This document shows, in pieces, positions 1-17,235 of a DNA stretch of 64,000 bases. A program made the translations under genes and the position numbers. Positions within the stretch are counted from its first letter, which is position 1, and each line of letters starts with the position of its first letter. Under the pieces are notes generated by a model, which had not been told where the DNA came from, did no database searches, and was given only the letters and a program-made list of their open reading frames with translations. The stretch lies in the IMG/VR virus record IMGVR_UViG_3300027771_001853, positions 186,001 through 250,000 of that record. One strand, written 5' to 3'.

Positions 1-1
1 C

Positions 2-1540
2 CTGTGCGTATGGGTTTGTTGATGGAACAGACACACATTGGTTTGCCAAGGTATTCGGTGGAGTACCGGTTTCATGATAAAAGCTGCCCCAGGTTACATT
101 AATGGGGATATTCCCATTTATTTGTTCATCCATTAAATATTCACACGCTCCAATAATGGAGATAGAAGCATGTGGTTTTAGGGTTAAACTATCACAGGAG
201 GAACCATTAGTGATAGTTGCTAATGGTGGTGTTATGCATTCGTACCACACTGTAGTTGTAGTTGTTGTTAGTGGTCCGGTAGTGGTTGTTGTGGTTGGGG
301 TACTAGTAGTGGTTGTGGTTGTTTGACCAGGTAACGTGGTGGACGTGGTTGTTTGCCCTGGACAACAAGGTATACCATTAGCTGATATAAGTGCTATAGA
401 TAACGCATTACAACCTAGCATATTTATTAGTCCGTTTGATGTTAGGTCCGATTGGGTCTCCACCATATTAGCGACAGGTATACCAACAATAGGGTTACAT
501 AATGGTTTCCAACATTCATTTTGTACTATCCCACCTGACACTAATAAGTTTGGTATTTGGAAGGCATAATTATCATCACAATTAAGTGAATTAAGTAATA
601 GTAATAAATTACCTGTGGCCCCATATTGTACTGGTACACCAGTACCCACACAACAACTTTCTATCCCACATGTCACACAAGGGTCACCAGTAGTTGTAGT
701 GGTACAACAATTATAACATGTGGTTGTAGTTGTGGTTATAGGAGCTACTGTTGTGGTAGTAGTTGTTAGGGGTTGTATTCCAGTTGTAGTGATAGTGATA
801 ATAGGGCACTGTTGACAATCGACAACACTACCAAGTAGTCCTCTTGTTGGTGGTGTTCCAAAAGTGTTTCCACACTGTCCTCCAACATACCCAGTATGCC
901 AATCACCACTACCCGGATTATTACTTACATCTATATCATAACTGGTTGGTCTGGGACTGTCACCCTCATAGTACATACATGTACCATCAGATAATTGAAT
1001 AACATCACCCTGACTTATAGGCCCTATAGCAGCAGTTAACTGGTTATGGAATGCCTGATTATTTGTATCAGTATTTGGTAAAAAACATGAACCTAAAGGC
1101 GGGGCCCCTGGTGTAGGAACTACTGGTACTGGATTAAAAGCGAGTGAATTATCACAATAACGCCAAGAATGATTGAGTCCGAAAACGGATGGTTGGGTTT
1201 CACACGCATCACAATCACCATATGGTTCAATAAACCAACCAGAATTTTGTAAAGAATGACCACCAAGATATTCAACATGTATAGCTTCTGGTGTTGCGAA
1301 GTCCCCTATATACTCAAAACAAGTCCAAAATTGTGGATATGGAGTTGAGTATAGTCTAATAAAGTCCCCAGGTACTATTTGATGCCCTGCACTTTGTTGG
1401 TAATAATAATTCTGAAAATGTTCATTGTTAGCTATTGTATTTCCTGGAGGCGAACCGGATTTACCAATATTACAATCGAAAGGGACTGGTACACTAAAAG
1501 GTTCGCTAGTAAAACAAGCTCTATATTTTTTATATCCCAT
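2..1540 (-). CDS. Partial (runs off left edge) Cys-rich, poly-Thr modular putative virion fibre/decoration protein; absent from ORF track
   Basis: ATG at 1540 (MGYKKYRACFTSEPF...); frame read as open to the window edge; contains TTTTTT linkers, GIESCC and C-x-x-Y-x-G modules like the 4512-aa protein; TATTTAT motif 16 nt upstream. Confidence 0.85.
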   Translation of the reverse strand, partial: MGYKKYRACFTSEPFSVPVPFDCNIGKSGSPPGNTIANNEHFQNYYYQQSAGHQIVPGDFIRLYSTPYPQFWTCFEYIGDFATPEAIHVEYLGGHSLQNSGWFIEPYGDCDACETQPSVFGLNHSWRYCDNSLAFNPVPVVPTPGAPPLGSCFLPNTDTNNQAFHNQLTAAIGPISQGDVIQLSDGTCMYYEGDSPRPTSYDIDVSNNPGSGDWHTGYVGGQCGNTFGTPPTRGLLGSVVDCQQCPIITITTTGIQPLTTTTTTVAPITTTTTTCYNCCTTTTTGDPCVTCGIESCCVGTGVPVQYGATGNLLLLLNSLNCDDNYAFQIPNLLVSGGIVQNECWKPLCNPIVGIPVANMVETQSDLTSNGLINMLGCNALSIALISANGIPCCPGQTTTSTTLPGQTTTTTTSTPTTTTTTGPLTTTTTTVWYECITPPLATITNGSSCDSLTLKPHASISIIGACEYLMDEQINGNIPINVTWGSFYHETGTPPNTLANQCVSVPSTNPYAQ

Positions 1541-1575: not shown

Positions 1576-4500
1576 TTAAATAGGCGTACATGTAGTTGTC
1601 GTTGTTACTGGACAACATGGTATCCTTAGTGTCGGGTCTTGGTTCTGATAAGGTAACCAAGCTTGGAGACCAGCACACGGTGTTGGTGCTGGTGGTGATA
1701 GTAGTACGGCCCCTGTCACTGTTGGTCCGGTTGGGCTATTTATTATTCTTGCACAAACCGGTACACCACTGATAATAAATAAGTGTGAGGAACCTAAACT
1801 TAAACCATTTATATCAGTAAGTAGTGTTCCAATTGCTACGTATTGTTGGAATACTCCGTTCGTATCAGAACAACACTCTTCCAAACCTCTACCAGTTACA
1901 TTTACAGTTGTTGTTGTTGTGGTTGGGCAACACCCGACTGATTGTCCTTTGTCTTCACATGTGTCACACTGGTCTGTCAACCCGGCTGGCCAAATAGGGA
2001 ATAAGAATGTACCACTAATTGTCCCTACAATAGGTGCACAACCAACACATTTATGGAAACAACAAGCCATACCGTCAAATTGACCACCACTAACCACCAA
2101 TCTAAAGGTATCGTCATTGTTCAATCCAGCAACTCCAGATACAGCACCAGGGTCACCTACTAATTCATAAACATCCCCAGTACAACAATGCTTTACATAT
2201 TGTACTTCTTGGGTTGTAGTGGTTGTGGTGGTTGGTAGTGGGGCACAACACCCTAATGGGAGTGCTTGGTCTAAGGTATAACAATCACTATACACTATTC
2301 CTGGTGTAGTAAAAGTTGATACCGACAAACCAATAGGGTTATTTATAACTTTAAAACATCCCCTTATAATGAGTCCAGTAGTATCTACCAATTGGGTACT
2401 AAACGCTTGACCAACGATTAGACCATTAAGATACACTTCAAATGCTCCTAACGCTACATATTGGTCAAATGCCCCAGTTACTGGGTCCATACAACAAGAC
2501 TCAACACCTATTGTACCACCTATTGTAGTTGTGGTAGTACAGGGAGCTTCCTCATCAAGTACACATATATTACAAGGGTCCTGATAAACAAGAGATGAGT
2601 AGATATTAACTGGTGTTATGGAAACAGCTACACCTGGACCACTCACGTTTGAGACGAACTCCCAACACCCTTCTTGAAGTGAGAATGGTGCTGTAATAAT
2701 ATTACCATATACTACGTCACCTAATATTAAATTACTGTTTAACCAAGTTAATATCACACCTGTAGCTATATACTCATCATAAGGTGGACAACATTGTCTA
2801 ACACCTAAGGTTGGGGATGGTGTTGTAGTAGTTGTGGATACCGGTATTGTAGTTGTCGTTGTTACTGGACAACACAAAGTGTAATTGGTATTTGTATTTA
2901 ATTCTGCACATGATGATGATACAAAAGAAGGTGCAAACATATTAGTTTGTATTATACCAACCGGGTTATTTATTATTTTCCAACAACCAGTATAATCGGA
3001 TGGCATTATAGTACTATAAAACGCGTCACCCAAATTCATCCCCGCTAGAATCGTATAGAGTGTCCCTGCGGCTACAAATTGTAAGGTAGGGTCGCAACAA
3101 TTTTCTAAACCTAATGGGCCAGAAGATGTGGTAGTTGTAGTTACTGGTCCTGTTGTGGTTGTTGTGGTTGGTGGTACCGTGGTTGTTGTTGTTGTTGGAC
3201 AACTACAAGGTTGGTACATTTCTCTACAAATCATACAAGCGTAAGGATAATCCGTTGTCCAAACATCATCTATGTTATTTAAAGTTAACATAGGTGCTCC
3301 CACTACTGGTTCGTAGGTATGGATAGCTTCGTCAACAATAGTAAGACACATATTAGGACATGGTGTGTGTATAGTATCTATTGGTACTATACTTGGGTTA
3401 CCTGTGGTACCACTAACTAAACTAGGTATGTCGTATACGGTATTATAATACACTTGATTTTTATTACAACATAGGTTTTCCCCCCAATATGGGTTAGTTG
3501 GGTCATAACAACATGTTAATAGTCCGTATGTCGTACAACAACCAGTATGACTTGTACCTGAATAATTGTAACATGGGTCTTGTTTATCAACGTTACGAGG
3601 ATTTACCGATATAGGTCCTATTTGGTTGTCTATATATTCCCATACTGTCTGTCCTAAATCCCATGCTGGGTTACTTGCCGGTATAGACGTGTTAACAATA
3701 GTTGAAGCTGTGGCTATTTGGTATGGGTTGTTACCACCAACACAGTTAATATTATCACACCATTGTACTACCCACGATGCTATTTCAAGTGGTGGTATAT
3801 TCACATATTGGAATGGAACTATCTGGTAGTGTCCAATACCAGGTGCGTTATTTTGATTTACGTAGATATAATCAGGTGCACTACCTCCTTGTATTTCATC
3901 TAAACAGTACGTACCATCGGCTGATGTTAAACATACATCATCCTCTACACTTGTAGATGTACCAGTGTAAAATATTTCTAAGTGAGAAACACCAGATAAA
4001 CAGAAACAATCTGCACACCTTTTCGTTGTAGTGGTTGTAGTTGAGGGACAAGGGACAGACCAACTAAAATTAGTCTCCGTACAACCTGAACATATACAAG
4101 GTGGGTCCCCTGCCGCGACACTATTAGTACACCAAAACTGATATGTAAATCCAGCCGGAACTACTGGTGCTGACGGTTCACTTGGAACAACAACATAACA
4201 CCCAGGAACCCCGTTAATTGTACCCAAAAGTCCTTGACCTACTAATATGTCGGTTTGGTCATTTGGATACGATAATATCGTATTACAATCAGCTGTTAAT
4301 GAGAACACATACTCTTCACAACAAGCAGATAACGCGAAAGGTAGACATACGGTAGTAGTGGTTGTAGTACAAGGAATCTCACACGCGGCACAACTATAAA
4401 GTGGTATAGGTGGGTAATTTATACTAATTATTGGGCCCTGTTCTCTACCTATTGTTTCCCAACATTCATTTGTAAGAGTATCGTAGAAAGCATTATAAGA

Positions 4501-7500
4501 AGTTAAACCTGAAGCTGGATTAGTTAAATCACCACACCACCTAGCAAACACAATATTATTTGTTTTACAACAAGCTGATAAACCTTGACATGTTGTGGTT
4601 GTTGTGGTTGGTGGGACTGTTGAGGTTGTTGTAGTAGCTGACCATGCTGTTGTTGTGGTTGTTGTTGGTGGGACTGTGGTTGTCGTACATACAATATGGT
4701 GGGTATCTAAACATCCACCAATAGAAAAACAATCTTGGTAGAATATACTTGGCACTACACTTATATTGTAAAGGTCCGGTCCTGGTATTTCTATTCTCTC
4801 ATAACACATATTAGTCCCCACATCATAAAACACTTGACCGATAGGCATAAAACTTAAATCTGTTTTAGTACAACCAGAACAAGTTTCATTAGTGGTTGTA
4901 AACTTTCTAACAGGTCTAATATATTTTGGGCTACCTTGTATAATATTATTATTTATGTCTGGGTAAGGTATGAGAGATTTACTATGTAATTCTGAACTAA
5001 ATAACTCAGGGAATATGGAGTCTCTACCCGAACATGGTGTACCTGTAGGGTAGTTAGGTCCATTAGACATACCTAAACTTAAATGTATATTATTAAACCC
5101 ATTAAACATTGGGAAGTATTCCGCCCTACTGGCATCACATTCACTAGAAGTCCAGTAATACCCACCTTCAGCAAAATTATATGTAGAGTAAAAAGTTTCG
5201 TTTGGTGGTCCTGCGGCTAGAGGGTTTTCTAAACCAATAGTTTGACCCCCAGTAGAACCAACAAGTCCATTATACATTTCATTCATTTCTTTAATGGTAG
5301 GTAAGTACCAATCTGTGTATCCACTAAATGAGAATGTAGAACATATGTGAGCTGCACTATGAAGAGTTATATTAGAAGCGTCTAAATTACTTCCAGGGTT
5401 TGGCCAAACACTATTACCTATGTATTCTTTTGTACAATCCAAATAACCACCACCAGCATCAGCCTTTTTATCTTTACAATCATATGTAAAAGGTACTGTA
5501 TTACCACTACAAGGGTTTGTTCTAGCCCAATTAACATCAGTAGTACATGAAGGACAACACGGGTAACCGTAAATGTCTGGTGTACAAGCATTATTTATTT
5601 TTGATGTGTTGTCACTACCCGCGAATATTTCTCTTGAAGTTCCACTAACATAAAGGTTCATACATCCCCACATTGTAAATGTATGTGCTGAATCAGTCGC
5701 GTTTGCGGCTATTATATTTTGGGGTAAATCATAGTTAGATAAATTTACATCATATGGTGAAGCTTCCAAATAATTCCCTTGACCATCATGATAGAAGACA
5801 ACACCACCCGCTGGTCCCGTATCACCTATACTATATGTTTGTCCAGTTAAACAACAACAAGGTTTAATACCATAACAAATATGAGGACGAGTAGTAGTTG
5901 TTGTGGTAGGTCTATTAGTTGTTGTGGTGGTTGTTTTTGGTGGGTCCCATATTGTTGTAGTAGTTGTAACACAATCATCTACTATCTTATGAGTTATCTC
6001 ACAACACTCACAATCATCATAAGGTCCATTTAGTGGTACATTGACGTTATAATTTGTTGGTCCTGGGTACGCTATTCTTTCATAACATTGTCCAGATAAT
6101 GGGTCAAACCATGTATTACCTATTGGTACAGTAGATAAATCAGTAGTTGTATATCCAGAACAAGTTGCGTAATTATATGACCTAACAGGTCTTAACCACA
6201 TAAATAGGAAATTCTTCTGCAGTACCTGCATTGTTGTACCCCACGTAGTTGGGAGTCCAATAGCAATTGTATCGTATACTGGGTTGGCTGGATGTTCACT
6301 AGAAGTAATCCATATTGGTGGTTGGTCTGTTGAACCTGAAAAAGGTTTTAAGTCGTCTAAGTCGGCTAAATTATACAATGGAGATAATAGAGCTTGTCCT
6401 GGACCTATATTAAACCATAATTTTAACCATTCGTTATAACTTGGAGCAAACCAATCATCATACCCGTTATAAATTAAAGTGTCGAGATACGTTGCCCATG
6501 GGGTTGGGTCTGGACACCCAGCAGCAATAATCTCATTTGTATTTATTTTTCCCATACCAATTGAAGTACCTAGAGTTGGGCTCGGAAGTACAGGTGTGCC
6601 CCAACAACCCCATCTCATACCAAAACCACCAATTTCTGTTGATTTAGGTGCTACTTCATATATGATGTTATTAATCGTATCAACATGAAATACAAATCCT
6701 CCGGCTTGACCTACATCACCAACATTAGGAACAACACCAATTATAACGTCATCTTCACAACAACAAGGTTTTAACCCCCATATTTCACTTGGTCTTGTTG
6801 TAGTAGTGGTAACAGGTTCACAAATAATTTCATTAATTTGCTCACAAGCATCACAATCTATATAAGGACCTCCAGGATTTGGTACTGGAGCGGTAAAATC
6901 AAAATATGTTAGTCCTGGGTCAGCAATATGAGTAAAGCATTCACCTGACGTAGCGTCATACCAAGTTCCACCTATAGGGATTGCTGATAAATCTGTATAT
7001 GTAAAACCAGAACAACCAGTATCGTTTATACGTTCTGGCATACAATTCGCACCATTAGGGTAATCATCATTACAACAACAAGAATTAAGACCCATATTTG
7101 TAGTAGTATCATCCCAAGTTATACCTTTGTTAGTTAAACTTCCACCCCACCCTGAATTTGGATTTGTGTCACAATCTGAACAAGTGGTTCCGTTAGTTGA
7201 ATTCGTTACAGTACATACTAAATTAGAATAGAAGTCAGGAGTACCTTGACCCATATATCTTAGACAAGTACACGTCATACCTGGTATTCTTGAAGGCCCC
7301 AACCCTGACGGACCATTAGTGTAGGTTATATTGTCATTCCAGTAACACCATCTAACGGTTTCACCCACAGATGGACTTCCAAGATATTGATAGAAATCTA
7401 GATTGTTCGCTAAATAATCGACAGATGGGACAGTACTAGTATTTGTAACACCATCATAACAAGCGTCACCAATGTAGTTTGGTGTACCGAAATATTCGAT

Positions 7501-10500
7501 GCCCCATGTTTTGTTGACTGTCCCCAGAATGGAGGCTATATTAGGTATGTAGTCAGAAATTTCATTCCAACAAACCTCAAATAGGTGAGATACTGGAGCA
7601 GTGGATTTGGTGATGGTGGTGGTAGTGGTAAGGGTAGGAGATTGTGATAGTGACGATTCAAGGTTTTGGAACCTAGAAAATAACGGTACCACACCAACAT
7701 CAGTAGATATATTTAGTTTTTGTCCAAGGCATCTAGCTTCACCTGATTCGTATTTAACTTGGTCTACAATATCTAGAATTTCTATAGATTGGTGTCCATA
7801 GGCGTTATCCTGATACAAATTGATAAAGTCACCAATCTTAAGTGCGTTTACCGATGTTCCATCATTTCTAACAAAATTAGATAGGGGACCACCTCCTGAT
7901 GCTAATTGTTGTGTTGTGGTTGTGGTTGTTTGTCCAAATAAGGTAGTGGTTGTTGTTGTTGGTATAGCGTATGTTGTAGTAGTTGTTGTTGGTATAGCGT
8001 ATGTTGTAGTAGTTGTTGTTGGTATAGCGTATGTTGTAGTAGTTGTTAGTTGCCCAAATACTGTTGTTGTAGTTGTAATTGGGGGTATAGTGTATGTTGT
8101 AGTAGTTGTAGTTGGAGGTATAGCGTATGTTGTTGTAGTTGTAGTTGGCGGTATAGCGTATGTTGTTGTTGGTGTTGTAGTTGGGGGTGTAAATGCCTTT
8201 TTGTCTATATAAGTGCATGAAGTAGTATCACTTTTTGTAACATATTGGTCACCATCTTTTGTCCATACTTTAACTAAATAAGCTAGACCATTAACATTTA
8301 TATCTTCCCAACCTACCTTATTAACCCCCCCATTAGTAGGTTCGTAATATAGAACTGTTGGTGCGGTGGTAATTAGTTTAGTTTTTTCAGGTGAGGTTAT
8401 TTGACCGAAAATATCTCTAGTATCACCAATAAATTGTGGTACCTGTTGTAACATACTTAAACTTTGTAAATCTTCACACACACAACACTCATTATTAGTA
8501 CCTCCGGTTGATAGTCCGTTAACACCAAAATGCCACCAATTACCAACTGGGTAGTATGGGACCGCTGATGAAGATACTGTTCCCATATATTTTAAACATA
8601 GTACATCATTATTAAAACCATTTAAAGTGGAGTGTAGGGTAACTACTTGACCTACACCTGGACTACCAACCCAACTATAAAAGTAATTACCTCTAGTTAC
8701 CATATCATCTAACCCAACTGCTGTCATAAAGTCTATAAGTCCTGATGTTGTTCCCGGGGCGTCAATAGCTGATATGCCCACACCAGGTGGGAATGGTGAT
8801 GAAGTGGGTGATGGTAAAAAAGAAAATAGTTCACATTCCTCAAACACGTGAAAAGTACGTATCTCCGCTAATCCACCATCACAACTATAACAATCATTAT
8901 GTGTTGATAATACGGTAGCGGTACCAACAGGACAAATATCGTAATTAACGCTTAAAGGGCCCCATATTCTATTACCTACATAAGCAATCCAGTAGTCACA
9001 AAATATAGCCATCAATATACCGAAATTACTACAATTACCTAGGGCGAATATTGGGTCGTTAGGGTATGACCAAGTATAAACACCCAAATATTTAATGCAA
9101 TTTGTAAATGTTCCTAGTGCTATACCTGAATCTGGGCAGGCGACTGTCCACTCCATTTCTACAGTTATCACTTCTCCAGGGTTTGGGCTACCTAGATGAT
9201 TATAAAAATTTTGATTATTTAATGAATATTCTTGTACTGCGGCTAAGTCTTGACCAAGGTATGCACTATCAACGTACCCTGTCTGAGAATCAAGCCATAC
9301 TGGAGCAAATTTAGGGTACCCATTCAGTTGTGGTATAGAAGGGTCACCTGGACAATCCTCAAACATATGTAATGTAACATCCACATTTGCGTTTGCGTTT
9401 AATGGTATAGTTGGTAAGGGAGTGCTGTTTGGTAAAGGGTTTAGGTTAACATAGTCTCCCAAGGTCACAGTCGTCTTAGGTTTACTATAGTGGGTACCTT
9501 CCGGCATTATCGGTTGGTATGTCCTTGTATCAGCTGACGGACAACAACATCTTTCTACCCCATAAATTTGTCTAAAAGTGGTACTAGTTGTTGTTGTTGT
9601 TCTAAATATCTTGGTTGTAGTTGTGGTTGTTGGTGCACAATATGGGTCTTCACCATCTCCATTAGCCATACATTCAACACAGTTATCAATACCAAAAAGA
9701 CCTAGTGGGTTTAAGGTTATCCCATTGGGTGGAAGAGGGTTAGGTGTCACTATAACCTTATAACACGCCTTATGGTCTATGTCATTAAATGTCTCACCAA
9801 TAGCCAAACCACTAACTGAACCAGGGTTATCCACAATCCATTGTTCTGCTGTTGAACCAGTGATACAACACTCTTCTACTGTAATACCTGAAGTACATGC
9901 TGTATGAAAACATACTGTCGCTGATAATGTAGCTATACCAATATTATTAGCTTGTGTAGTCCCTAACCAATTAGATAGTAAGTATTCGTGACTATGTACT
10001 GATATAAAACCAAAATGTGTTAACCCACTTACACACCTACCATCAGGTGTTTTACCTGGACCGTAACCAGAATTCCAAAAACAAGCATCCGCACAATAAG
10101 GGTTTGTTTGTTTTATAGCATCAAAATTATATAGACCACCACCATTATTTGCGGCACCAATATCTACAAAGTCCACCGCGGGAACTACTCTACCTTCAAC
10201 AGCTCCATACGCATTTAATTGAGTAATCCTTTCCTGTTGGGTATCATTTACTGGTAATGTGTAAACAAAACTATTAAATGAACCATTATTACCTGGAGTA
10301 CCAGTAGGTTGGTCCCAAACACCATTATAGTATGTACCCATAAAAGAATCAAAATCTCTTAAGTAATTTTCTGTTGGTGTTATTTTCTGTAACCCAGATG
10401 TTACATTAATACTGTTGAGTTGGTTGGTATTCCAATCAGTACAGGGTACTGGTGGTGTTATAACACCAACGCCACTTGGAGCATTACATACCGGTAACCA

Positions 10501-13500
10501 TGGACTATCGTTATACCAAGGTTCAGTTTCATTGACAAAAGAAATAACCACAGCATTAGGGTCATTTAGAGCCGCGGCTATTGGCATATCAAGTCCAGAC
10601 CCACATACACCTTGTGGAACACTTATCCCAACTGGGGTTGGTATAAATGCATTTGTACCTTCCCATGGGTATCGTGAATACCTTAACCAAGATTCAGATT
10701 GTTGTTGTGGTGGTGGTACTGTAGCCTGATATAAACACCCAGTATAACCAGGTAATGTTTGAATAAATTGTTGCCACCAAGGTAGAACCACATTATTAGC
10801 TAATTGAGCTACACTAACAGCAAAACTACCACTCCCATCATAAAACACATAAAAATTAGTACCAGAAAATATACATGGACATTCACTAGGTGGTGTAGGT
10901 GGGCATTCACATTCACACGATACTAGAAGTGTGGTTGTGGTTGTTGTTGGTGGTGCGGGTGTAGTAGTTGTAGTTGTTGGTGGCCCAAGTGTTGTCGTAG
11001 ACGTGGTAGTAGATGGGGCACACGGGTCTGTAGTTGTTGTTGTCGATACAGGTACTGTAGTTGTTGTGGTTGTGGGACAAGGATTGTCCGGTGTCTCACA
11101 AAAACTACCAGCACATTCTAAACCAGCTAACGCTGTTACTCCAGATATACTACCTAATATAGTATTAGTTATAGGTCCTGAAGGTAATGTATATTTTGTT
11201 AAAACTAGGTTATCTGTCGCTCCAGAACAACACGTATTTTCTCCCCAACTAATTTCAATATCGTTACCATGACTGGAGCCTGGGGCGTAATCGGATAGGT
11301 CAATTGGACTACCAGCTGGTATTGGGTTTTTGAAAAAGAAACAGTATGTGTGTTCCATTAGTGGAGTTGGTGTAAGTGCTGGAGCACCAGCAATACAAGG
11401 TGCCGCCCCACCACGACACCTACCACCACCTGCACCAGCACTAATTGGTGGTGTCGCATCACAAATAGCAACAGGGAATCCAGGTCCTGTTGGGTACCTA
11501 ACTAATTCATATTTCCAACTTCCTATAATTGTACCAGAACCGTCAGGATGTCTAACCGTGAAGTTCCAATTATTAGTACTAGCGGTAAAATTATCCCCGT
11601 TAAAAACTTGACCTGATTGGGCTGAGTCATACATCAATACTTTCATATACTCTGCACCCATTACTTGGTCTTTGAATGTCCCCACCCCTGGTAGGTTACC
11701 GTTTGTACCTACATCAAATACCCCTTGTGTTACAATTTCTCCTGGTGTAGTCATACCCCCATCTTTCCATATCTCAGCATATTCTGGTTGACATGGTGTA
11801 CCCATTCCACCAAATTGTAAAGTTATTTCAAATTGAGATGGTTCACCTACCATTACACCTAAACCTATATTAGCTGGATTTTCAAGATATAAAATATTTG
11901 CACAATTCCCAGCAGGAGAATTAGGCCATTGGCCACATTGGGCTACACCTGCCTGATACCAATCTCTATTACCGGTACAATTTTGATGCTGAAGAGTACC
12001 TTCACCACAAGGTGAAGGTGTTGTAGGCATACATGATGGAACACCAGGAAAATTACCATCCATTACAATATTATAGTCCCATTGTCCTATGTTAGTGTTA
12101 GTAAATGGGTCGTATACCGTTAAAGTTAGTGGGTTGGTTGTGTCCCCAGTTAACATATCCATACTTACAAAATTCCCATCTTTGTCAAGTACGTTTAAAC
12201 TTAACTTAAGTGATTCAGCCCCTATTATTGGTCCAAACAATGGAGCAGCTCCTTGAATATTTCCGGGAGCACATGACCAAGGGGTGGGAATAGTAAAGGC
12301 ACATTGACCAGATATAATCAGACTTTCGTCAATCCACGTATGTTGGAACTGTTGTGGTGTACCCCCCGAACAACTAGGTAGTTGTCTTACAATGTAAAGG
12401 TCTTCACAATCATATAGTAAACCAGCGGAAATACTACTATTAAGTAATGGGTTTATAGTCCCAGGTATTGGATTGGCGTTTAATGTTGTACCATCAAAAA
12501 TACACACATAACCAGCTGATGAATTACAATTTCCTGGACCAAAAGAACATTCATCCAAATAAGTATAAAAATTGTTAGTTCCTGGTACGTTAGATAACCC
12601 ACTCATATGAGCATATGGGTTAGGTGGACTTGTAAATACGGTAAAATCACCCAAATAAGTTACACTACCATTAACCCATGGTTGTATCTGATATACCGGA
12701 TGAACAGTATTATTATAAGGAATAAAAATTAATTTATCATTTAAGCTATCATAACCTAAACAACCTTCACCTAACTCCTCAGTTCTTATACCACTTGTGT
12801 TATTACACACATCATAACCAGTATAAGTTTGAGCTAAAGACCCACTACCTGTGTTAGGGTTTACTTGGTATATGTGTAAGTCGTATCTAGATGTACCATT
12901 ACAAGTATCATCTATTTTATGTTCTAAAAATGCCCCATATAAAAAGTTATTTGTTGTTCTTTTAGCGAACCCTTGGAAGAACATATGTGGTATAGCTCCC
13001 CACATTGTTGGGTCTTTTAAAGCAATAGGTAACGTGGTTTGGGTGTGGGGTGAAGTTTTATGTATCGAATAAAAACCATTATTTCCTGTGGTTCCCGTAT
13101 TGATTATCTCCCAAGCTCCTGTAATTAAGCAACACTCATCACAACACGGTATCGTTGTCGTTGTTGTTGACGCGTAAGGGTCTGGTGTTGTCGTACTAGT
13201 AACGCAATCACCAGTAAGTGGTATAGTACCAAAATCACATGGGTCTGGTGTTGTAGTTGTTGTGGTTGGTGGTACCGTGGTTGTTGTTGTTGTTGGACAA
13301 TCACCAGTTAACGGGATTGTACCAAAATCACATGGGTCAAGTGTTGTTGTAGTTGTTGTTTGACCAGGTAACGTGGTTGTAGTTGTTGTTTGACCAGGTA
13401 ACGTGGTTGTAGTTGTTGTTTGGCCAGGTAATGTAGTTGTAGTTGTAAAACCTAAAATTGTTGTGGTGGTAGTAACACACTCACACTGACCATCAGTCAC

Positions 13501-15114
13501 CAAAAAGTCGTTCGCTAAAGGTGGGATGCCGTCATAGATAGTTGTTAATGTACTCCCAGTACCAACTAATAGATAATTGTTTGCTCCAATATCCCTAATA
13601 AGGCTCCACCAGTTATTAGATATCGGTAGTGACCCCCAAGGGTTTTGTTTTATTAATATACCGTGTGTTAATATACTATTAGAAGGGTTACTAATGTGGT
13701 TATATATGTACGGTGAAGTCACATCATTACAATAAGAACCTTCTAACATATCACCAGGATACGTTACACCAGATAATACACCTTGGAAATACTCTACAGG
13801 GTAAATACACACACATTCTGTAGTGGTGGTTGTGGTTGTTGGTTCTGGTGGGATATAAGTCGTTGTTGTTGTGGTAGAAGGGCATTCAGCTGTAATATAC
13901 TCAGTATACGAACAACCGTCTGGTGCTAACACTTCCACACAATACGTTTTACAACATTCTAAAGTCAAATCAAAACAAGTGGTACTTGCTGTACACCAAC
14001 CAAAATGTGGAGCTGTACATCCTGACACGTACATTATTTGGCAATTGGTACAATCTGAATCACATAAAGATATTGTAGAGTTTGTAAAATCTGGAGAAAC
14101 ATCTATACTATACTCTTCTGTACAAAGTGTTGTGGTAGTTGTAACAACAGGTTCTATAATCTCAAACCCAAACATTTTATGATTGTAATTAGGTACGTAT
14201 GTTGTTTGTGTTGACGCTGTTTGGGGTACCACCTCCCAGTTATAGGTTTGTGGGTCTATTTTAGCTAACCCATTGTAGGATAGAAAGTAAAATTTATCAT
14301 CATACTCATCGTAGGTTAAGTCACCAACCCACGCTCTTCCACCAAATGGTATATTACGACCCGCTTGGTTATTAATAACATATGAAACATGTGCTGAACA
14401 ATAACTTAATACTGTGTTAACCCCATTGTTTGTGTTTATGTGTTGGAATGTTAGACCACTTGTCATCCCACTGATATAGCCTACCGCGTATAACTCACTC
14501 TGTCTATACGCTAAACCAAGACCACTATTTAAAAAACAGGTAGTCCCAGAATAAAATGGTTGTTGTGGTGTTGCATTTGGATGACTAACACTCCAAGTGT
14601 GTAAATATAAATCACCAACAGCTGGGTAAACCCATGAACCCATACCACCCATTGTCATATCAACCCCTTGCATGTTTGTACACCTTAATAAGGTAAAACA
14701 ATCGTTTGCTTCATCATAAGCAAATCCACCAACTAAAGGTTGCCACCCATGGTTATCGTAAGGTAATGTTAATGTAAGCCCCGAATATATTGTTTTGGTC
14801 CTACCTCCCCAGTCTTGGTCTGTTTTGAAGATTTGTCCTGGTAATTGCCAAGAACTTATGGAACCATTTTCACCAGCGAACCCATAAAGTTTTTTATTCT
14901 TTTGGGTCATTCCATAGTATGGGTCCATATTAAAAAATGGACCAGAGTACGAAGATTCTGGAGATTCTGTGATACCCGCTTCGTTCCTAGGTATTAATGG
15001 TGGTGGTGAACCTACGGGGGCTAAATTCCACTCATATAAATCATACTTCCATATGTTAGGTCCAGAAATTGAACCTTGTTGTATAGTATAAGCGGAGAAA
15101 TTTGGTGAAGGCAT
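1576..15114 (-). CDS. Giant 4512-aa modular Cys-rich/poly-Thr protein, putative virion fibre or adhesin with two DUF1566-like lectin domains and a vWA-like segment
   Basis: Single long ORF; dozens of T5-T7 linkers; GGxVF...DW[FY]xP...RPVR motifs; YDGSGS motif; located among structural genes. Confidence 0.8.
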   Translation of the reverse strand: MPSPNFSAYTIQQGSISGPNIWKYDLYEWNLAPVGSPPPLIPRNEAGITESPESSYSGPFFNMDPYYGMTQKNKKLYGFAGENGSISSWQLPGQIFKTDQDWGGRTKTIYSGLTLTLPYDNHGWQPLVGGFAYDEANDCFTLLRCTNMQGVDMTMGGMGSWVYPAVGDLYLHTWSVSHPNATPQQPFYSGTTCFLNSGLGLAYRQSELYAVGYISGMTSGLTFQHINTNNGVNTVLSYCSAHVSYVINNQAGRNIPFGGRAWVGDLTYDEYDDKFYFLSYNGLAKIDPQTYNWEVVPQTASTQTTYVPNYNHKMFGFEIIEPVVTTTTTLCTEEYSIDVSPDFTNSTISLCDSDCTNCQIMYVSGCTAPHFGWCTASTTCFDLTLECCKTYCVEVLAPDGCSYTEYITAECPSTTTTTTYIPPEPTTTTTTTECVCIYPVEYFQGVLSGVTYPGDMLEGSYCNDVTSPYIYNHISNPSNSILTHGILIKQNPWGSLPISNNWWSLIRDIGANNYLLVGTGSTLTTIYDGIPPLANDFLVTDGQCECVTTTTTILGFTTTTTLPGQTTTTTTLPGQTTTTTTLPGQTTTTTTLDPCDFGTIPLTGDCPTTTTTTVPPTTTTTTPDPCDFGTIPLTGDCVTSTTTPDPYASTTTTTIPCCDECCLITGAWEIINTGTTGNNGFYSIHKTSPHTQTTLPIALKDPTMWGAIPHMFFQGFAKRTTNNFLYGAFLEHKIDDTCNGTSRYDLHIYQVNPNTGSGSLAQTYTGYDVCNNTSGIRTEELGEGCLGYDSLNDKLIFIPYNNTVHPVYQIQPWVNGSVTYLGDFTVFTSPPNPYAHMSGLSNVPGTNNFYTYLDECSFGPGNCNSSAGYVCIFDGTTLNANPIPGTINPLLNSSISAGLLYDCEDLYIVRQLPSCSGGTPQQFQHTWIDESLIISGQCAFTIPTPWSCAPGNIQGAAPLFGPIIGAESLKLSLNVLDKDGNFVSMDMLTGDTTNPLTLTVYDPFTNTNIGQWDYNIVMDGNFPGVPSCMPTTPSPCGEGTLQHQNCTGNRDWYQAGVAQCGQWPNSPAGNCANILYLENPANIGLGVMVGEPSQFEITLQFGGMGTPCQPEYAEIWKDGGMTTPGEIVTQGVFDVGTNGNLPGVGTFKDQVMGAEYMKVLMYDSAQSGQVFNGDNFTASTNNWNFTVRHPDGSGTIIGSWKYELVRYPTGPGFPVAICDATPPISAGAGGGRCRGGAAPCIAGAPALTPTPLMEHTYCFFFKNPIPAGSPIDLSDYAPGSSHGNDIEISWGENTCCSGATDNLVLTKYTLPSGPITNTILGSISGVTALAGLECAGSFCETPDNPCPTTTTTTVPVSTTTTTDPCAPSTTTSTTTLGPPTTTTTTPAPPTTTTTTLLVSCECECPPTPPSECPCIFSGTNFYVFYDGSGSFAVSVAQLANNVVLPWWQQFIQTLPGYTGCLYQATVPPPQQQSESWLRYSRYPWEGTNAFIPTPVGISVPQGVCGSGLDMPIAAALNDPNAVVISFVNETEPWYNDSPWLPVCNAPSGVGVITPPVPCTDWNTNQLNSINVTSGLQKITPTENYLRDFDSFMGTYYNGVWDQPTGTPGNNGSFNSFVYTLPVNDTQQERITQLNAYGAVEGRVVPAVDFVDIGAANNGGGLYNFDAIKQTNPYCADACFWNSGYGPGKTPDGRCVSGLTHFGFISVHSHEYLLSNWLGTTQANNIGIATLSATVCFHTACTSGITVEECCITGSTAEQWIVDNPGSVSGLAIGETFNDIDHKACYKVIVTPNPLPPNGITLNPLGLFGIDNCVECMANGDGEDPYCAPTTTTTTKIFRTTTTTSTTFRQIYGVERCCCPSADTRTYQPIMPEGTHYSKPKTTVTLGDYVNLNPLPNSTPLPTIPLNANANVDVTLHMFEDCPGDPSIPQLNGYPKFAPVWLDSQTGYVDSAYLGQDLAAVQEYSLNNQNFYNHLGSPNPGEVITVEMEWTVACPDSGIALGTFTNCIKYLGVYTWSYPNDPIFALGNCSNFGILMAIFCDYWIAYVGNRIWGPLSVNYDICPVGTATVLSTHNDCYSCDGGLAEIRTFHVFEECELFSFLPSPTSSPFPPGVGISAIDAPGTTSGLIDFMTAVGLDDMVTRGNYFYSWVGSPGVGQVVTLHSTLNGFNNDVLCLKYMGTVSSSAVPYYPVGNWWHFGVNGLSTGGTNNECCVCEDLQSLSMLQQVPQFIGDTRDIFGQITSPEKTKLITTAPTVLYYEPTNGGVNKVGWEDINVNGLAYLVKVWTKDGDQYVTKSDTTSCTYIDKKAFTPPTTTPTTTYAIPPTTTTTTYAIPPTTTTTTYTIPPITTTTTVFGQLTTTTTYAIPTTTTTTYAIPTTTTTTYAIPTTTTTTLFGQTTTTTTQQLASGGGPLSNFVRNDGTSVNALKIGDFINLYQDNAYGHQSIEILDIVDQVKYESGEARCLGQKLNISTDVGVVPLFSRFQNLESSLSQSPTLTTTTTITKSTAPVSHLFEVCWNEISDYIPNIASILGTVNKTWGIEYFGTPNYIGDACYDGVTNTSTVPSVDYLANNLDFYQYLGSPSVGETVRWCYWNDNITYTNGPSGLGPSRIPGMTCTCLRYMGQGTPDFYSNLVCTVTNSTNGTTCSDCDTNPNSGWGGSLTNKGITWDDTTTNMGLNSCCCNDDYPNGANCMPERINDTGCSGFTYTDLSAIPIGGTWYDATSGECFTHIADPGLTYFDFTAPVPNPGGPYIDCDACEQINEIICEPVTTTTTRPSEIWGLKPCCCEDDVIIGVVPNVGDVGQAGGFVFHVDTINNIIYEVAPKSTEIGGFGMRWGCWGTPVLPSPTLGTSIGMGKINTNEIIAAGCPDPTPWATYLDTLIYNGYDDWFAPSYNEWLKLWFNIGPGQALLSPLYNLADLDDLKPFSGSTDQPPIWITSSEHPANPVYDTIAIGLPTTWGTTMQVLQKNFLFMWLRPVRSYNYATCSGYTTTDLSTVPIGNTWFDPLSGQCYERIAYPGPTNYNVNVPLNGPYDDCECCEITHKIVDDCVTTTTTIWDPPKTTTTTTNRPTTTTTTRPHICYGIKPCCCLTGQTYSIGDTGPAGGVVFYHDGQGNYLEASPYDVNLSNYDLPQNIIAANATDSAHTFTMWGCMNLYVSGTSREIFAGSDNTSKINNACTPDIYGYPCCPSCTTDVNWARTNPCSGNTVPFTYDCKDKKADAGGGYLDCTKEYIGNSVWPNPGSNLDASNITLHSAAHICSTFSFSGYTDWYLPTIKEMNEMYNGLVGSTGGQTIGLENPLAAGPPNETFYSTYNFAEGGYYWTSSECDASRAEYFPMFNGFNNIHLSLGMSNGPNYPTGTPCSGRDSIFPELFSSELHSKSLIPYPDINNNIIQGSPKYIRPVRKFTTTNETCSGCTKTDLSFMPIGQVFYDVGTNMCYERIEIPGPDLYNISVVPSIFYQDCFSIGGCLDTHHIVCTTTTVPPTTTTTTAWSATTTTSTVPPTTTTTTCQGLSACCKTNNIVFARWCGDLTNPASGLTSYNAFYDTLTNECWETIGREQGPIISINYPPIPLYSCAACEIPCTTTTTTVCLPFALSACCEEYVFSLTADCNTILSYPNDQTDILVGQGLLGTINGVPGCYVVVPSEPSAPVVPAGFTYQFWCTNSVAAGDPPCICSGCTETNFSWSVPCPSTTTTTTKRCADCFCLSGVSHLEIFYTGTSTSVEDDVCLTSADGTYCLDEIQGGSAPDYIYVNQNNAPGIGHYQIVPFQYVNIPPLEIASWVVQWCDNINCVGGNNPYQIATASTIVNTSIPASNPAWDLGQTVWEYIDNQIGPISVNPRNVDKQDPCYNYSGTSHTGCCTTYGLLTCCYDPTNPYWGENLCCNKNQVYYNTVYDIPSLVSGTTGNPSIVPIDTIHTPCPNMCLTIVDEAIHTYEPVVGAPMLTLNNIDDVWTTDYPYACMICREMYQPCSCPTTTTTTVPPTTTTTTGPVTTTTTSSGPLGLENCCDPTLQFVAAGTLYTILAGMNLGDAFYSTIMPSDYTGCWKIINNPVGIIQTNMFAPSFVSSSCAELNTNTNYTLCCPVTTTTTIPVSTTTTTPSPTLGVRQCCPPYDEYIATGVILTWLNSNLILGDVVYGNIITAPFSLQEGCWEFVSNVSGPGVAVSITPVNIYSSLVYQDPCNICVLDEEAPCTTTTTIGGTIGVESCCMDPVTGAFDQYVALGAFEVYLNGLIVGQAFSTQLVDTTGLIIRGCFKVINNPIGLSVSTFTTPGIVYSDCYTLDQALPLGCCAPLPTTTTTTTQEVQYVKHCCTGDVYELVGDPGAVSGVAGLNNDDTFRLVVSGGQFDGMACCFHKCVGCAPIVGTISGTFLFPIWPAGLTDQCDTCEDKGQSVGCCPTTTTTTVNVTGRGLEECCSDTNGVFQQYVAIGTLLTDINGLSLGSSHLFIISGVPVCARIINSPTGPTVTGAVLLSPPAPTPCAGLQAWLPYQNQDPTLRIPCCPVTTTTTCTPI
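7952..8170 (-). repeat. Intragenic 30-bp tandem repeat encoding YAIPTTTTTT
   Basis: Three perfect copies of gttgttgttggtatagcgtatgttgtagta at 7952-8041, then degenerate copies. Confidence 0.9.
13205..13446 (-). repeat. Intragenic repeats: 3 x LPGQTTTTTT (30 bp) and 2 x PCDFGTIPLTGDC
   Basis: 13351-13380 identical to 13381-13410; third copy near-identical; duplicated peptide visible in the translation. Confidence 0.9.
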
Positions 15115-16035: not shown

Positions 16036-17235
16036 TTATTGATTACAAGTTGCACAATTGATAAACTGGTTAGATAATGTATTACCATCAATAATCCTCA
16101 AGGTAGATACATCTGGTACACACGGTTCCACTGTTGTTCTATAACACCCACTATATGTTAGCGAGCCATTAGGGTCATATGTACCATTAGTTAACCCAGA
16201 GAAACTATAATACCCACCATCTACTAATAGTGGTGACGCACATGGTCGTATCAAAGATAGAAACCAAGCGTTCGCATTACAATCAGATATACCATAACAA
16301 ACGGGTGGGTTACAAGTTGTTGTAGTTGTTGTTGGTACTGGTATTGTGGTAGTTGTGGTTGTTGGTGCCGTGTATGTTGTTGTCGTTGTTGTTGGTTCTG
16401 GTATTGTGGTAGTGCTTGTGGTAGTTTCACATGGTTCGTCATCAATTATCGGTGGGCAACATAAACATTCTGGTTCTGAAACAAAAACAGTGTATGATGT
16501 TTTTATAAATCCACCACAGTCTTGGTTTGTTTTTTGTATACTAGTACTAAAAGTGTAGATTCCTGTTCCGTAATTGTAGTCATTTTCTATTTTACTCTTA
16601 ATCCAATCAGGTATGTTAGTATTGGGTGACCAAGTAAACCCACTAGACTCCCAACAAGTACCAGCACTAAAGTGACCAGTATATATGTCAGTAACCTCAC
16701 TAAGACTACATTCACAATTATCAGCATTTAATAATTGTGTATCCGGAGATAATTCCCAATAATAAGGGTAACCACAACCAGACCAACAGATTTCTACCTT
16801 ATCTGCGTTTCTTTTTAAAGAATTGGTCCAACCGTTATCCATCCCCGTTAACCCTATATCACAGATGGATGTGATAAATCCACCCATTTCTGTACACCCA
16901 GAGGTATAACAATCAACCCCACAATCTATACAATCCAAATCTTTTGCTGATGGTGTTGCGTGACACCAACATGTACCACTTATACTCAATATTGTATTGT
17001 TAGGGTAAAATGTACCACATTCCATAGTCAATTGCAATGAAGAGGACGGGTTACCTAAGTCTATCCAGACGGGTAAAACCTCACAATCATCGTAACCAAT
17101 GATATTTTTAGAGTATAAAACTTCCGTGTTAATATCCCTTTCATCAGCTACTAAGAAAAAATCATAGTAGGATGTGTAGTCTAATTTAGCGTCTAATCTA
17201 TTAAAATAATAATTCTTTAAATTCTGTGGTCCCAT
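16036..17235 (-). CDS. Cys-rich putative virion structural protein with poly-Thr linkers
   Basis: 399 aa; T-tracts; many Cys; TATTTAT upstream. Confidence 0.7.
   Translation of the reverse strand: MGPQNLKNYYFNRLDAKLDYTSYYDFFLVADERDINTEVLYSKNIIGYDDCEVLPVWIDLGNPSSSLQLTMECGTFYPNNTILSISGTCWCHATPSAKDLDCIDCGVDCYTSGCTEMGGFITSICDIGLTGMDNGWTNSLKRNADKVEICWSGCGYPYYWELSPDTQLLNADNCECSLSEVTDIYTGHFSAGTCWESSGFTWSPNTNIPDWIKSKIENDYNYGTGIYTFSTSIQKTNQDCGGFIKTSYTVFVSEPECLCCPPIIDDEPCETTTSTTTIPEPTTTTTTYTAPTTTTTTIPVPTTTTTTCNPPVCYGISDCNANAWFLSLIRPCASPLLVDGGYYSFSGLTNGTYDPNGSLTYSGCYRTTVEPCVPDVSTLRIIDGNTLSNQFINCATCNQ

What the first reader, a model, noticed from the sequence alone, without database searches (positions are those of the whole stretch)
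4770..9565. Nested display cassettes: cargo domains inserted at a fixed site of a repeated Cys scaffold
Seen: three times an opening half [YW]G-x-x-x-CCC (about 9560, 6780, 5874) is followed later by a closing half CSGxTxTDLSxxPIGxxx[YF]D...C[YF]xxIxxPG...DC (about 7020, 6165, 4885). The two halves are separated by different inserts: one ~840-aa block and two divergent lectin-like domains. Uninterrupted relatives of the scaffold occur further C-terminal. Inference: a scaffold loop that accepts swappable binding domains. Caveat: a second GLNSCCC just before the first closing half could be its true partner.
Basis: partly seen in the sequence, partly recalled or inferred. Interest (0 to 1): 0.6.

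Follow-up and report, generated by a model that had tools for sequence, protein, structure and literature searches.

The report
Lectin domains nested in phage scaffold
A 4,512-residue protein of an uncultured marine T4-like jumbo phage is built from small cysteine-rich domains on poly-threonine spacers; in two of these domains a lectin-like domain sits in one loop, and the claimed third nest and the idea of swappable cargo do not hold up.

Summary
They all lie in one minus-strand ORF (window 1576-15114, 4512 aa) of a 297.6-kb marine T4-like phage.

The "scaffold" is a real, previously undescribed ~85-aa Cys-rich domain:
- AF2 mean pLDDT 93.7.
- No Pfam or PHROG match.
- Best PDB match Z 3.0.
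- Nine credible proteins (ten hits at E<=1e-3) among 1.84 billion representatives.

Two cassettes are most likely nested. They are module B (aa 2774-3049) and module C (aa 3076-3476). In each:
- The opening 21 residues and the closing ~65 residues align to the two ends of uninterrupted scaffolds.
- The piece between them is a self-contained Lcl_C/DUF1566-like (C-type-lectin-like) domain. It also occurs alone in a bacterial protein.

The third pair, with the 840-aa "insert", is wrong. Together they form a "mini" scaffold with only a 19-25-aa loop at the same site.

"Swappable" is not supported. The two cargos are paralogues, and every relative found (four other variants) keeps the same cargo. 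One insertion followed by cassette duplication, with cargo loss in the mini copy, fits best.

The likely role is a glycan-binding fibre or adhesin that displays lectins as side branches. That role is inferred, not shown.

The parts
1576..15114 (-). Giant ORF P0001, 4512 aa. About 20 globular modules are separated by 45 runs of 4-7 Thr. It has 215 Cys.
   Evidence: Orthologues P0003 (4488 aa, 76% identity) and P0004 (4457 aa, 72% identity) have the same architecture.
9541..9564 (-). First "opening" YGVERCCC (aa 1851-1858). It is an orphan scaffold-like N-terminal motif and not the partner of the closing at 7014.
   Evidence: The profile match is weak (positions 5-36 only). A poly-T linker follows after ~50 aa in the orthologues.
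6814..7104 (-). Mini scaffold (aa 2671-2767). GLNSCCC plus a 19-aa loop (25 aa in P0004) plus closing half CSGFTYTDLS... It is the natural cargo-less form of the CCC subfamily.
   Evidence: Full-length profile match to positions 2-86. The alignment to B shows one clean long gap at the insert. The loop is 37-44% identical among orthologues, against 85-92% for the closing half.
6733..6795 (-). Module B opening half (aa 2774-2794, RPSEIWGLKPCCCEDDVIIGV). It corresponds to strand beta1 of the scaffold.
   Evidence: Profile positions 4-16. AF2 strand E6-10; pLDDT block means 75 for residues 1-10 and 61 for residues 11-20.
6166..6732 (-). Module B cargo (aa 2795-2983), an Lcl_C/DUF1566-like lectin-like domain.
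   Evidence: 44% identical over 123 aa to the stand-alone domain of bacterial PEP-CTERM protein P0005, starting at VPNVGDVGQAGG. VIA-align rows: 4EPS Z 4.2 and 8Q4E (Lcl C-terminal domain) Z 3.7, on a poor model. The C-terminal half is the most variable part among orthologues (54-72% identity, with indels).
5968..6162 (-). Module B closing half (aa 2985-3049), covering beta3 to alpha2 of the scaffold.
   Evidence: Profile positions 16-81, E 1e-6 to 1e-7, with B absent from the training set. AF2 10-residue block means 83-92 over residues 211-270.
5827..5889 (-). Module C opening half (aa 3076-3096, RPHICYGIKPCCCLTGQTYSI).
4882..5826 (-). Module C cargo (aa 3097-3411), an Lcl_C-like domain. It carries its own ~74-aa, 9-Cys sub-insert (aa 3181-3254, window 5353-5574).
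   Evidence: Pfam PF07603 E 6.8e-7, 30.0 bits against a 34.9-bit cut-off. Collinear with the B cargo at 30% identity. The sub-insert is seen in the alignment.
4687..4881 (-). Module C closing half (aa 3412-3476).
   Evidence: Profile positions 19-76 (hmmsearch domain c-Evalue 3.7e-7) and positions 18-77 (genome search E 2.9e-6).
1609..4596 (-). Seven uninterrupted scaffold copies: aa 3507-3582, 3590-3690, 3998-4083, 4100-4192, 4200-4290, 4302-4397 and 4406-4502. An unrelated 276-aa module (aa 3698-3973) lies among them.
   Evidence: AF2 model of aa 3997-4084: pLDDT 93.7, pTM 0.85.
9631..9897 (-). One more uninterrupted scaffold copy, upstream of the cassettes (aa 1740-1828).
2..1540 (-). N-terminal 513 aa of the next gene (P0006, 1977 aa in full). 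It is built from the same poly-T linkers and scaffold domains.

Best explanation
The finding lies in one gene for a giant beads-on-a-string protein of a marine T4-like jumbo phage.

The recurrent bead is a new ~85-aa disulfide-rich domain. Its order of elements is beta1 ending in G[LIV]xxCC, beta2, alpha1, beta3, beta4 starting C[WYF]xxI, beta5, beta6, then alpha2 with CxxC...C.

In one subfamily (CCC...CSG) the connection after beta1 holds extra sequence:
- 19-25 variable residues in the mini copy.
- A complete Lcl_C/DUF1566-type C-type-lectin-like domain in modules B and C.

The chain therefore enters and leaves each composite module through the scaffold, and the lectin domain hangs off it as a side branch.

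History (inferred): one insertion into an ancestral CCC-type scaffold, then tandem duplication and divergence of the whole cassette. C later gained a Cys-rich sub-insert, and the mini copy probably lost its cargo.

Function (inferred): a glycan-binding fibre or adhesin, with the scaffolds and Thr runs as spacers and the lectin domains as binding heads.

Shown here: the sequence homologies, the split alignment, the stand-alone occurrence of the cargo, and conservation among relatives. Inferred: 3D contact of the halves (weakly supported), glycan binding, virion association, and the order of events.
For: 1. The halves are homologous to the two ends of a continuous domain.
- An HMM built from uninterrupted copies hits B's closing half at profile positions 16-81 (E 1e-6 to 1e-7), C's at 18/19-76/77, and B's opening at positions 4-16.
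- MAFFT splits all 30 uninterrupted rows onto B residues 1-14 and 203-276.
- B aligned to the mini scaffold gives GLxxCCCxDD, one long gap, then CSGxTxTDLS....

2. The cargo is self-contained.
- P0005, a 227-aa bacterial PEP-CTERM protein, matches B from residue 22 at 44% identity and has neither half.
- Pfam Lcl_C matches C below threshold.
- PDB 8Q4E and 4EPS are the top structural rows, covering model residues 14/15-207.
- Lcl-CTD is C-type-lectin-like and binds glycosaminoglycans (PMC11162425).

3. Structure.
- The uninterrupted scaffold folds at pLDDT 93.7.
- In the B model the opening forms strand E6-10 (block mean pLDDT 75) and the closing half has block means of 83-92, with the same order of elements.
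- The same weak PDB templates align in both models. 2PWY 5-61, 3LGA 5-61, 2Z4H 137-214, 7DM4, 2FEZ and 1O54 superpose on scaffold residues ~1-55/80. In the B model they superpose on residues 1-4..243-269, so one rigid superposition spans the opening and the closing half.
- Split-chain test with ESMFold2: opening 30-mer against closing 71-mer gave ipSAE 0.53, best of 3 controls 0.01. The tool's verdict was "weak support". That mark was reached by 58 of 80 solved complexes and 2 of 110 mismatched pairs. At 0.60 or under it was reached by only 7 of the 80 solved and by both mismatches. Runs agree in >=35% of contacts and partner pLDDT is >=47.

4. Module boundaries. B and C are each bounded by poly-T linkers and have none inside.

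5. History.
- The B and C cargos are collinear paralogues.
- A tree of the closing halves gives ((B, mini), C) with support 91/88.
- Five lineage variants keep the order mini-B-C.
Against: - No coordinates or contact map were available. Contact between the opening and closing halves is inferred from indirect read-outs, and the complex test is only "weak support".
- The B model is poor overall (mean pLDDT 61, pTM 0.45; insert residues 132-200 below 50).
- Joining C's opening to its closing half did not raise the HMM score above random 17-mers (18.5 bits against 17.7 +/- 3.1). For B the gain was about 2.9 SD.
- The MSA given to AF2 already contained the split alignment.
- Counts of extra Cys in the opening and in the start of the closing half co-vary only imperfectly: 42 of 57 rows are balanced.
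- B and C have odd numbers of Cys (11 and 21).
- Lcl_C membership is below Pfam's cut-off.
- No evidence places the protein in the virion. There are no PHROG or Pfam hits for it or its neighbours.
- The tree has no starred branch and rests on 68 columns.
Confidence: 0.72

Rival explanations
1. Plain tandem arrangement. The [YW]GxxxCCC stretch is just an N-terminal extension or linker of the lectin domain. The "closing half" is an independent small C-terminal domain, so nothing is nested.
For: The opening is short, and its contribution to the HMM score is modest for B and nil for C. The 3D evidence for contact is indirect or weak.
Against: - The same G[LIV]xxCC motif starts every uninterrupted scaffold.
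- In the confident model it is strand beta1 of that domain.
- The closing halves match the profile only from position 16-19, so they lack beta1.
- The stand-alone homologue P0005 has no such extension.
- The mini copy has the motif directly before the closing half.
- Controls in the split-chain test scored 0.00-0.01.
Confidence: 0.13
2. One reading: three nested cassettes, one with an ~840-aa cargo, on a scaffold whose loop takes up different, exchangeable binding domains.
For: The same site occurs in three length states. The mini loop and the distal half of B's cargo vary among orthologues.
Against: - Eleven poly-T linkers and several separate modules lie between aa 1856 and aa 2701.
- The orthologues have a linker ~50 aa after the first opening.
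- The closing at aa 2701 is completed by the adjacent GLNSCCC.
- The cargos of B and C are paralogues and are the same in all relatives.
- No other cargo was seen in any scaffold protein found.
- No cargo-less or swapped joints were seen in the contigs of four metagenomes.
Confidence: 0.04
3. The lectin-like cargos are targets of a diversity-generating retroelement, as many DUF1566/C-type-lectin-fold proteins of phages are.
For: DUF1566/CLec domains are common DGR targets (papers listed). The distal half of B's cargo is the most variable segment.
Against: No reverse transcriptase (PF00078) is found in the 93%-complete genome, while the control genomes ring. The cassette DNA has no template-like repeat anywhere in the genome. 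The variation among orthologues includes indels.
Confidence: 0.02

Closest known systems
Lcl C-terminal domain / DUF1566 (Pfam PF07603; Legionella pneumophila Lcl, PDB 8Q4E)
   Same: - The cargo domains share the family's motifs as I know them: GDxGPAGGxVF at the start, GYxDW[FY]xP[ST]xxE in the middle, RPVRx[FY] at the end.
- C gives a sub-threshold Pfam match.
- 8Q4E is the second-best structural row for the B model.
- Lcl-CTD has a C-type-lectin-like fold and binds sulphated glycosaminoglycans (PMC11162425).
   Different: - Here the domain is inserted inside another domain rather than sitting at the end of a collagen-like stalk.
- It scores below Pfam's cut-off.
- It contains Cys pairs, whereas Lcl-CTD has no disulfides.
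- C has an extra 74-aa Cys-rich sub-insert.
- Trimerisation, a feature of Lcl, is not indicated.
DGR variable proteins with C-type-lectin fold (Bordetella phage Mtd; DUF1566-type targets in Bacteroides phages)
   Same: A phage-borne lectin-fold binding domain, with its variability concentrated in the distal part.
   Different: There is no reverse transcriptase and no template repeat in this genome. The variation includes indels.
Bacteroides fimbrial protein BACOVA_04982 (PDB 4EPS)
   Same: It is the best structural row for the cargo of B: Z 4.2, 113 residues aligned, 19% identity. It is a lectin-like head on a surface fibre.
   Different: The match is weak and rests on a low-confidence model. 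It is a pilus subunit, not a phage protein, and has no scaffold nesting.
Beads-on-a-string glycan-binding decoration and fibre proteins of phages (T4 Hoc and other Ig-like or BACON-domain proteins; from my own knowledge)
   Same: Strings of small independently folding domains on a virion-associated protein, thought to bind glycans weakly.
   Different: The bead here is a new Cys-rich fold, not Ig-like. The linkers are Thr runs. The protein is about ten times longer. Virion association is not shown.
Nested (discontinuous) domains in general
   Same: A parent domain is interrupted in a loop by a complete guest domain whose ends lie close together.
   Different: Nothing differs in principle. The novelty lies only in the parent domain and in seeing the empty, short-loop and occupied states side by side in one protein.

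Membership tests
Pfam PF07603 Lcl_C (DUF1566), for the cargo domains | Profile match at or above the gathering score (34.9 bits) | tested here: not met
   C scores 30.0 bits, E 6.8e-7. B gives no match. They are therefore called "Lcl_C-like" and not filed as members.
Pfam PF07603 Lcl_C (DUF1566), for the cargo domains | C-type-lectin-like fold superposable on Lcl-CTD (8Q4E) | tested here: inconclusive
   Z 3.7, rmsd 4.3 A, 85 residues aligned, model residues 14-207. The model's insert is poor, with pLDDT below 50 over residues 132-200.
Pfam PF07603 Lcl_C (DUF1566), for the cargo domains | Carbohydrate binding | not testable with these tools
   Needs a glycan array or a binding assay.
New Cys-rich scaffold domain (defined here by alignments A2, A3 and A6) | Profile match of the closing halves of B and C, with neither in the training set | tested here: met
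   B matches profile positions 16-81 at E 1e-6 to 1e-7. C matches positions 18/19-76/77 at E 3e-6 to 4e-7.
New Cys-rich scaffold domain (defined here by alignments A2, A3 and A6) | N-terminal strand G[LIV]xxCC present and aligned to profile positions 1-16 | tested here: met
   B aa 2778-2795 matches profile positions 4-16. MAFFT places all uninterrupted openings on B residues 1-14. The statistical weight is small because the motif is short.
Nested (inserted) domain architecture | The guest is a complete domain that exists on its own elsewhere | tested here: met
   P0005 matches from B residue 22 and carries no scaffold halves.
Nested (inserted) domain architecture | The two halves of the parent domain are in contact and form one fold | tested here: inconclusive
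   AF2 strand order and pLDDT. The same PDB templates span both halves. Split-chain ipSAE 0.53 against 0.01 in controls, judged "weak support". No coordinates could be inspected.
DGR target protein | Reverse transcriptase and template repeat in the same genome | tested here: not met
   No PF00078 match and no repeat of the cassette DNA.
Phage tail fibre or head decoration protein | Recognisable virion-anchoring domain, or a match to a structural protein family | tested here: not met
   No PHROG or Pfam family for P0001, P0006 or their neighbours. The N-terminus gives only beta-propeller leads. Virion association remains an inference from the architecture and from the late-gene neighbourhood.

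The most novel reading that the evidence does not exclude
The ~85-aa Cys-rich domain would be a new fold, with no solved relative at Z>3. Its beta1-alpha1 connection would be a naturally permissive grafting site. One protein shows it empty, with a hypervariable 19-25-aa loop, with a 190-aa lectin, and with a 315-aa lectin that itself carries a nested Cys-rich subdomain. If deeper sampling of this phage clade shows unrelated cargos at the same junction, it would be a natural display platform. Phages could use it to shuffle binding heads without disturbing the fibre, and it would be a ready-made scaffold for protein engineering.
Probability: 0.25. Interest if true: 0.65.

Novelty: new variant of a known kind. 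Interest (0 to 1): 0.45.

Why it matters
- **New domain family.** It documents a Cys-rich domain that is confidently modelled yet has no Pfam, PHROG or PDB relative. The domain is confined to a clade of widespread marine jumbo phages.
- **Unusual architecture.** It shows a clear natural case of domain grafting in a phage surface-type protein, with lectin heads carried as side branches on a Thr-spaced fibre.
- **Testable questions.** What glycans do these phages bind? How does a protein with 215 cysteines mature when it is made in a bacterial cytoplasm?
- **Practical warning.** Assemblies of these phages break inside this gene, so such proteins are under-represented in protein databases.

Tried and rejected
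- **GenBank phages.** tblastn with the cassette region found no match.
- **IMG/VR.** Scans with module B, the closing alignment and the downstream gene found no relatives. Alignment A2 was too divergent to make patterns from.
- **Related contigs.** The IMG/VR contigs found through the upstream gene end at the giant gene and hold no scaffold.
- **Word search.** Module B alone found only P0005.
- **Metagenome scan.** It returned only the window's own genome and near orthologues.
- **Fold searches.** Foldseek against the PDB found nothing at E<=0.001 for the scaffold. VIA-align against 48,161 chains gave a best Z of 3.0. The ESM Atlas by shape gave only unnamed viral clusters, best TM 0.63. By features it gave nothing above 0.84.
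- **PDB by sequence.** Nothing for either cargo.
- **DGR hypothesis.** Rejected.
- **Sulfhydryl oxidase (PF04777).** No match, but the controls did not ring either, so this is uninformative.
- **Cys-parity covariation** between the opening and closing halves was only partly consistent, so I did not rely on it.
- **Joined-halves HMM scoring** was suggestive for B and null for C.
- **Laid contigs.** Four marine runs showed no joints, meaning no cargo-less or swapped forms. Contigs cannot show absence.
- **Literature.** A search for Thr-linker, Cys-rich phage fibres found nothing relevant.
- **Joined construct not folded.** The natural mini scaffold and the split-chain test were used instead.

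Full report
**Context**

The window is bases 186001-250000 of a 297,623-bp virus record that is 93% complete. It encodes a T4-type major capsid protein, a portal protein and a large terminase. The nearest capsid relatives in GenBank are only 36-42% identical. They include Flavobacterium and Microcystis phages and uncultured megaphages. Near-identical DNA is held by marine water, sediment and sponge metagenomes from 13 studies, and one orthologue sits on a Tara Oceans scaffold. The source is therefore an uncultured marine T4-like jumbo phage.

**The gene**

The whole finding lies inside one minus-strand ORF, window 1576-15114, 4512 aa (P0001).
- 45 runs of 4-7 threonines cut the protein into about 20 modules, and it has 215 cysteines.
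- It is one of six adjacent genes for proteins of this style.
- Pfam finds only a sub-threshold Lcl_C match, and PHROGs finds nothing.
- Two orthologues, 72-76% identical and with the same architecture, exist in public metagenomes (P0003 and P0004). Further copies turned up in JGI and Tara contigs.

**Checking the observation**

CCC occurs four times (aa 1856, 2679, 2784, 3086), each time as G-[LIV]-x-x-CCC. CSGxTxTDLS closings start at aa 2701, 2985 and 3412.

The closings are clearly homologous. BLASTP gives E 1e-18 to 5e-8, with 21 invariant positions among the three copies and 17 among nine copies including orthologues.

**The scaffold is a real domain**

Nine uninterrupted copies in P0001 align with invariant Cys positions (A2). 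With paralogues and orthologues the alignment reaches 32-57 rows (A3 and A6). The shared pattern is G[LIV]xxCC ... G ... LxxG[DQ]xF ... C[WYF]xxI.NP.G ... P ... CxxC ... C(C)P.

AF2 models aa 3997-4084 at mean pLDDT 93.7 and pTM 0.85. The elements are beta1 5-9, beta2 16-19, alpha1 21-28, beta3 35-41, beta4 45-53, beta5 58-60, beta6 67-70 and alpha2 73-79.

No known fold matches it:
- Foldseek finds nothing in the PDB at E<=0.001.
- An exhaustive VIA-align pass over 48,161 chains gives a best Z of 3.0.
- The ESM Atlas offers only unnamed viral clusters, best TM 0.63.

A full HMMER profile search of 1.84 billion representatives gave ten proteins at E<=1e-3:
- Six belong to the same phage clade.
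- Three are more distant small proteins with two scaffolds each (P0012, P0013, P0016).
- One is spurious.

P0001 and its orthologues were themselves missing from that list, so very long proteins may be under-represented there.

**Are B and C nested?**

Sequence evidence:
- A profile built from uninterrupted copies hits the closing half of B at positions 16-81 and that of C at positions 18/19-76/77. E-values are 1e-6 to 4e-7. The opening of B matches positions 4-16. The two pieces are complementary parts of one profile.
- MAFFT, without guidance, splits every uninterrupted scaffold onto module-B residues 1-14 and 203-276.
- A pairwise alignment of B with the mini scaffold is GLxxCCCxDD, one long gap, then CSGxTxTDLS....
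- The stretch between the halves is a complete domain. Bacterial PEP-CTERM protein P0005 matches B from residue 22 (VPNVGDVGQAGG) at 44% identity, and it has neither half.
- C gives Pfam Lcl_C at 30 bits.
- The best structural rows for the B model cover residues 14/15-207. They are a Bacteroides fimbrial protein (4EPS, Z 4.2) and the Legionella Lcl C-terminal domain (8Q4E, Z 3.7). Lcl-CTD is C-type-lectin-like and binds glycosaminoglycans (PMC11162425).
- Both B and C are bounded by poly-T linkers and contain none.

Structural evidence is indirect:
- The B model is poor overall (mean pLDDT 61).
- The opening forms a strand (E6-10, block mean pLDDT 75).
- The closing half has block means of 83-92, with the scaffold's order of elements.
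- The same weak PDB templates that superpose on scaffold residues ~1-55/80 superpose on B residues 1-4 to 243-269. These include 2PWY 5-61, 3LGA 5-61 and 2Z4H 137-214. One rigid-body fit thus spans the opening and closing halves.

The opening 30-mer was folded against the closing 71-mer.
- ipSAE was 0.53; the best of 3 controls was 0.01.
- The tool's verdict was "weak support".
- The mark was reached by 58 of 80 solved complexes and by 2 of 110 mismatched pairs.
- At 0.60 or under it was reached by only 7 of the 80 solved complexes and by both mismatches.
- Runs agree in >=35% of contacts, and partner pLDDT is >=47.

Local HMM scoring of joined halves helped for B (+9 bits, about 2.9 SD above random 17-mers) but not for C. 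I put the nested reading at about 0.7-0.8.

**The third cassette**

The opening at aa 1856 is not the partner of the closing at aa 2701.
- Eleven poly-T runs and several separate modules lie between them.
- In both orthologues a poly-T linker follows that opening after ~50 aa.
- The closing at aa 2701, together with the adjacent GLNSCCC, gives a full-length scaffold match at profile positions 2-86.

This "mini" scaffold has a 19-aa loop (25 aa in P0004) at exactly the site where B and C carry their cargo. That loop is the least conserved part among orthologues, at 37-44% identity against 85-92% for the closing half.

**Swappable?**

- The cargos of B and C are collinear paralogues, with two HSPs at 30% identity.
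- C has an extra ~74-aa, 9-Cys sub-insert inside its lectin-like domain.
- All five lineage variants keep the order mini-B-C with the same cargos.
- No other cargo type was seen.
- Contigs from four metagenomes show no alternative joints.
- A tree of the closing halves gives ((B, mini), C) with moderate support of 91/88, on 68 columns.
- The mini loop keeps residues resembling both cargo junctions: CCC-NDDY..G against CCC-EDDVIIG, and MPERI against RPVRS.

This fits one ancestral insertion, duplication of the whole cassette, and cargo loss in the mini copy. It is an inference. Variation among orthologues is concentrated in the distal half of B's cargo (54-72% identity, with indels), as expected for a binding face. 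It is not DGR-driven: the genome has no reverse transcriptase and no template repeat.

**Mechanism proposed**

The protein is probably a long fibre or adhesin in which Thr runs and scaffolds act as spacers. Because the chain enters and leaves B and C through the scaffold, the lectin-like heads are displayed as side branches, off the axis of the fibre. Glycan binding and virion association are inferred from the families involved and from the architecture. They were not shown here.

**Verdict**

- Two of the three nests are well supported at sequence level and weakly supported at structure level.
- The third nest is a mis-pairing.
- "Swappable" is not supported.
- The scaffold is a new domain family, while the architecture (domain insertion, lectin-bearing phage fibre) is of a known kind.

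Noticed in passing
window 1-1540, 1576-15114 and 16036-17235; genome 173497-203235 (L007 covers 173001-187600): Six adjacent minus-strand genes all encode poly-Thr-linked, Cys-rich modular proteins of 1051, 640, 636, 1977, 4512 and 399 aa. None has a Pfam or PHROG family.
   Followed up: partly
window ~8990-9250, ~8470-8665 and ~7165-7435 (P0001 aa ~1955-2040, ~2150-2215, ~2560-2650); window ~900-1540 (P0006 N-terminus): A second repeated domain type, F[YF]x[HYW][LV]GSPxxGExV ... C[IL][KR]Y[LM]G ... CxxC. It may be a distant variant of the same scaffold with a longer first half.
   Followed up: no
window 5353-5574 (P0001 aa 3181-3254): The lectin-like cargo of module C carries its own ~74-aa insert with 9 Cys. 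The insert is absent from module B and from the bacterial homologue P0005, so this is a nest within a nest.
   Followed up: partly
L007:8607-14540 (-) = P0006, aa ~470-640, ~730-960 and ~1070-1290: Three ~230-aa modules starting W[YW]EC[IV]TPP and ending C[FY]CQPC...PCC. There is also a sub-threshold PQQ_2 (beta-propeller) match at aa 1577-1673.
   Followed up: no
window 14143-15114 (P0001 aa 1-324): The N-terminal module gets only language-model leads to beta-propeller families (DUF4394, DUF6923, Kelch; score 0.91). It could be the anchoring or another binding domain.
   Followed up: partly
L005, L006 (IMG/VR contigs): Related phage contigs end at or just before the giant gene, so assemblies seem to break in its repeats. 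P0001 and its orthologues were also absent from the hits of the big profile search. Such giant proteins are probably under-sampled.
   Followed up: no
window 50753-52591: The major capsid protein is 612 aa. The Gp23 profile matches in two stretches, the best at aa 344-597, and tblastn relatives align in two pieces. This hints at an extra domain in the capsid protein.
   Followed up: no
window 6406-6542: Logan contigs of two independent marine runs (X5, X8) break in this part of module B's cargo. A third run (X11) crosses it with 13 differences. This may be strain-level variation.
   Followed up: no
L009 (Tara scaffold, 3026 bp): The more distant two-scaffold proteins (P0012, P0013, P0016; 303-374 aa, no poly-T) start directly with YRWGI[KQ]NCC. 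P0012 lies next to a radical-SAM gene.
   Followed up: no
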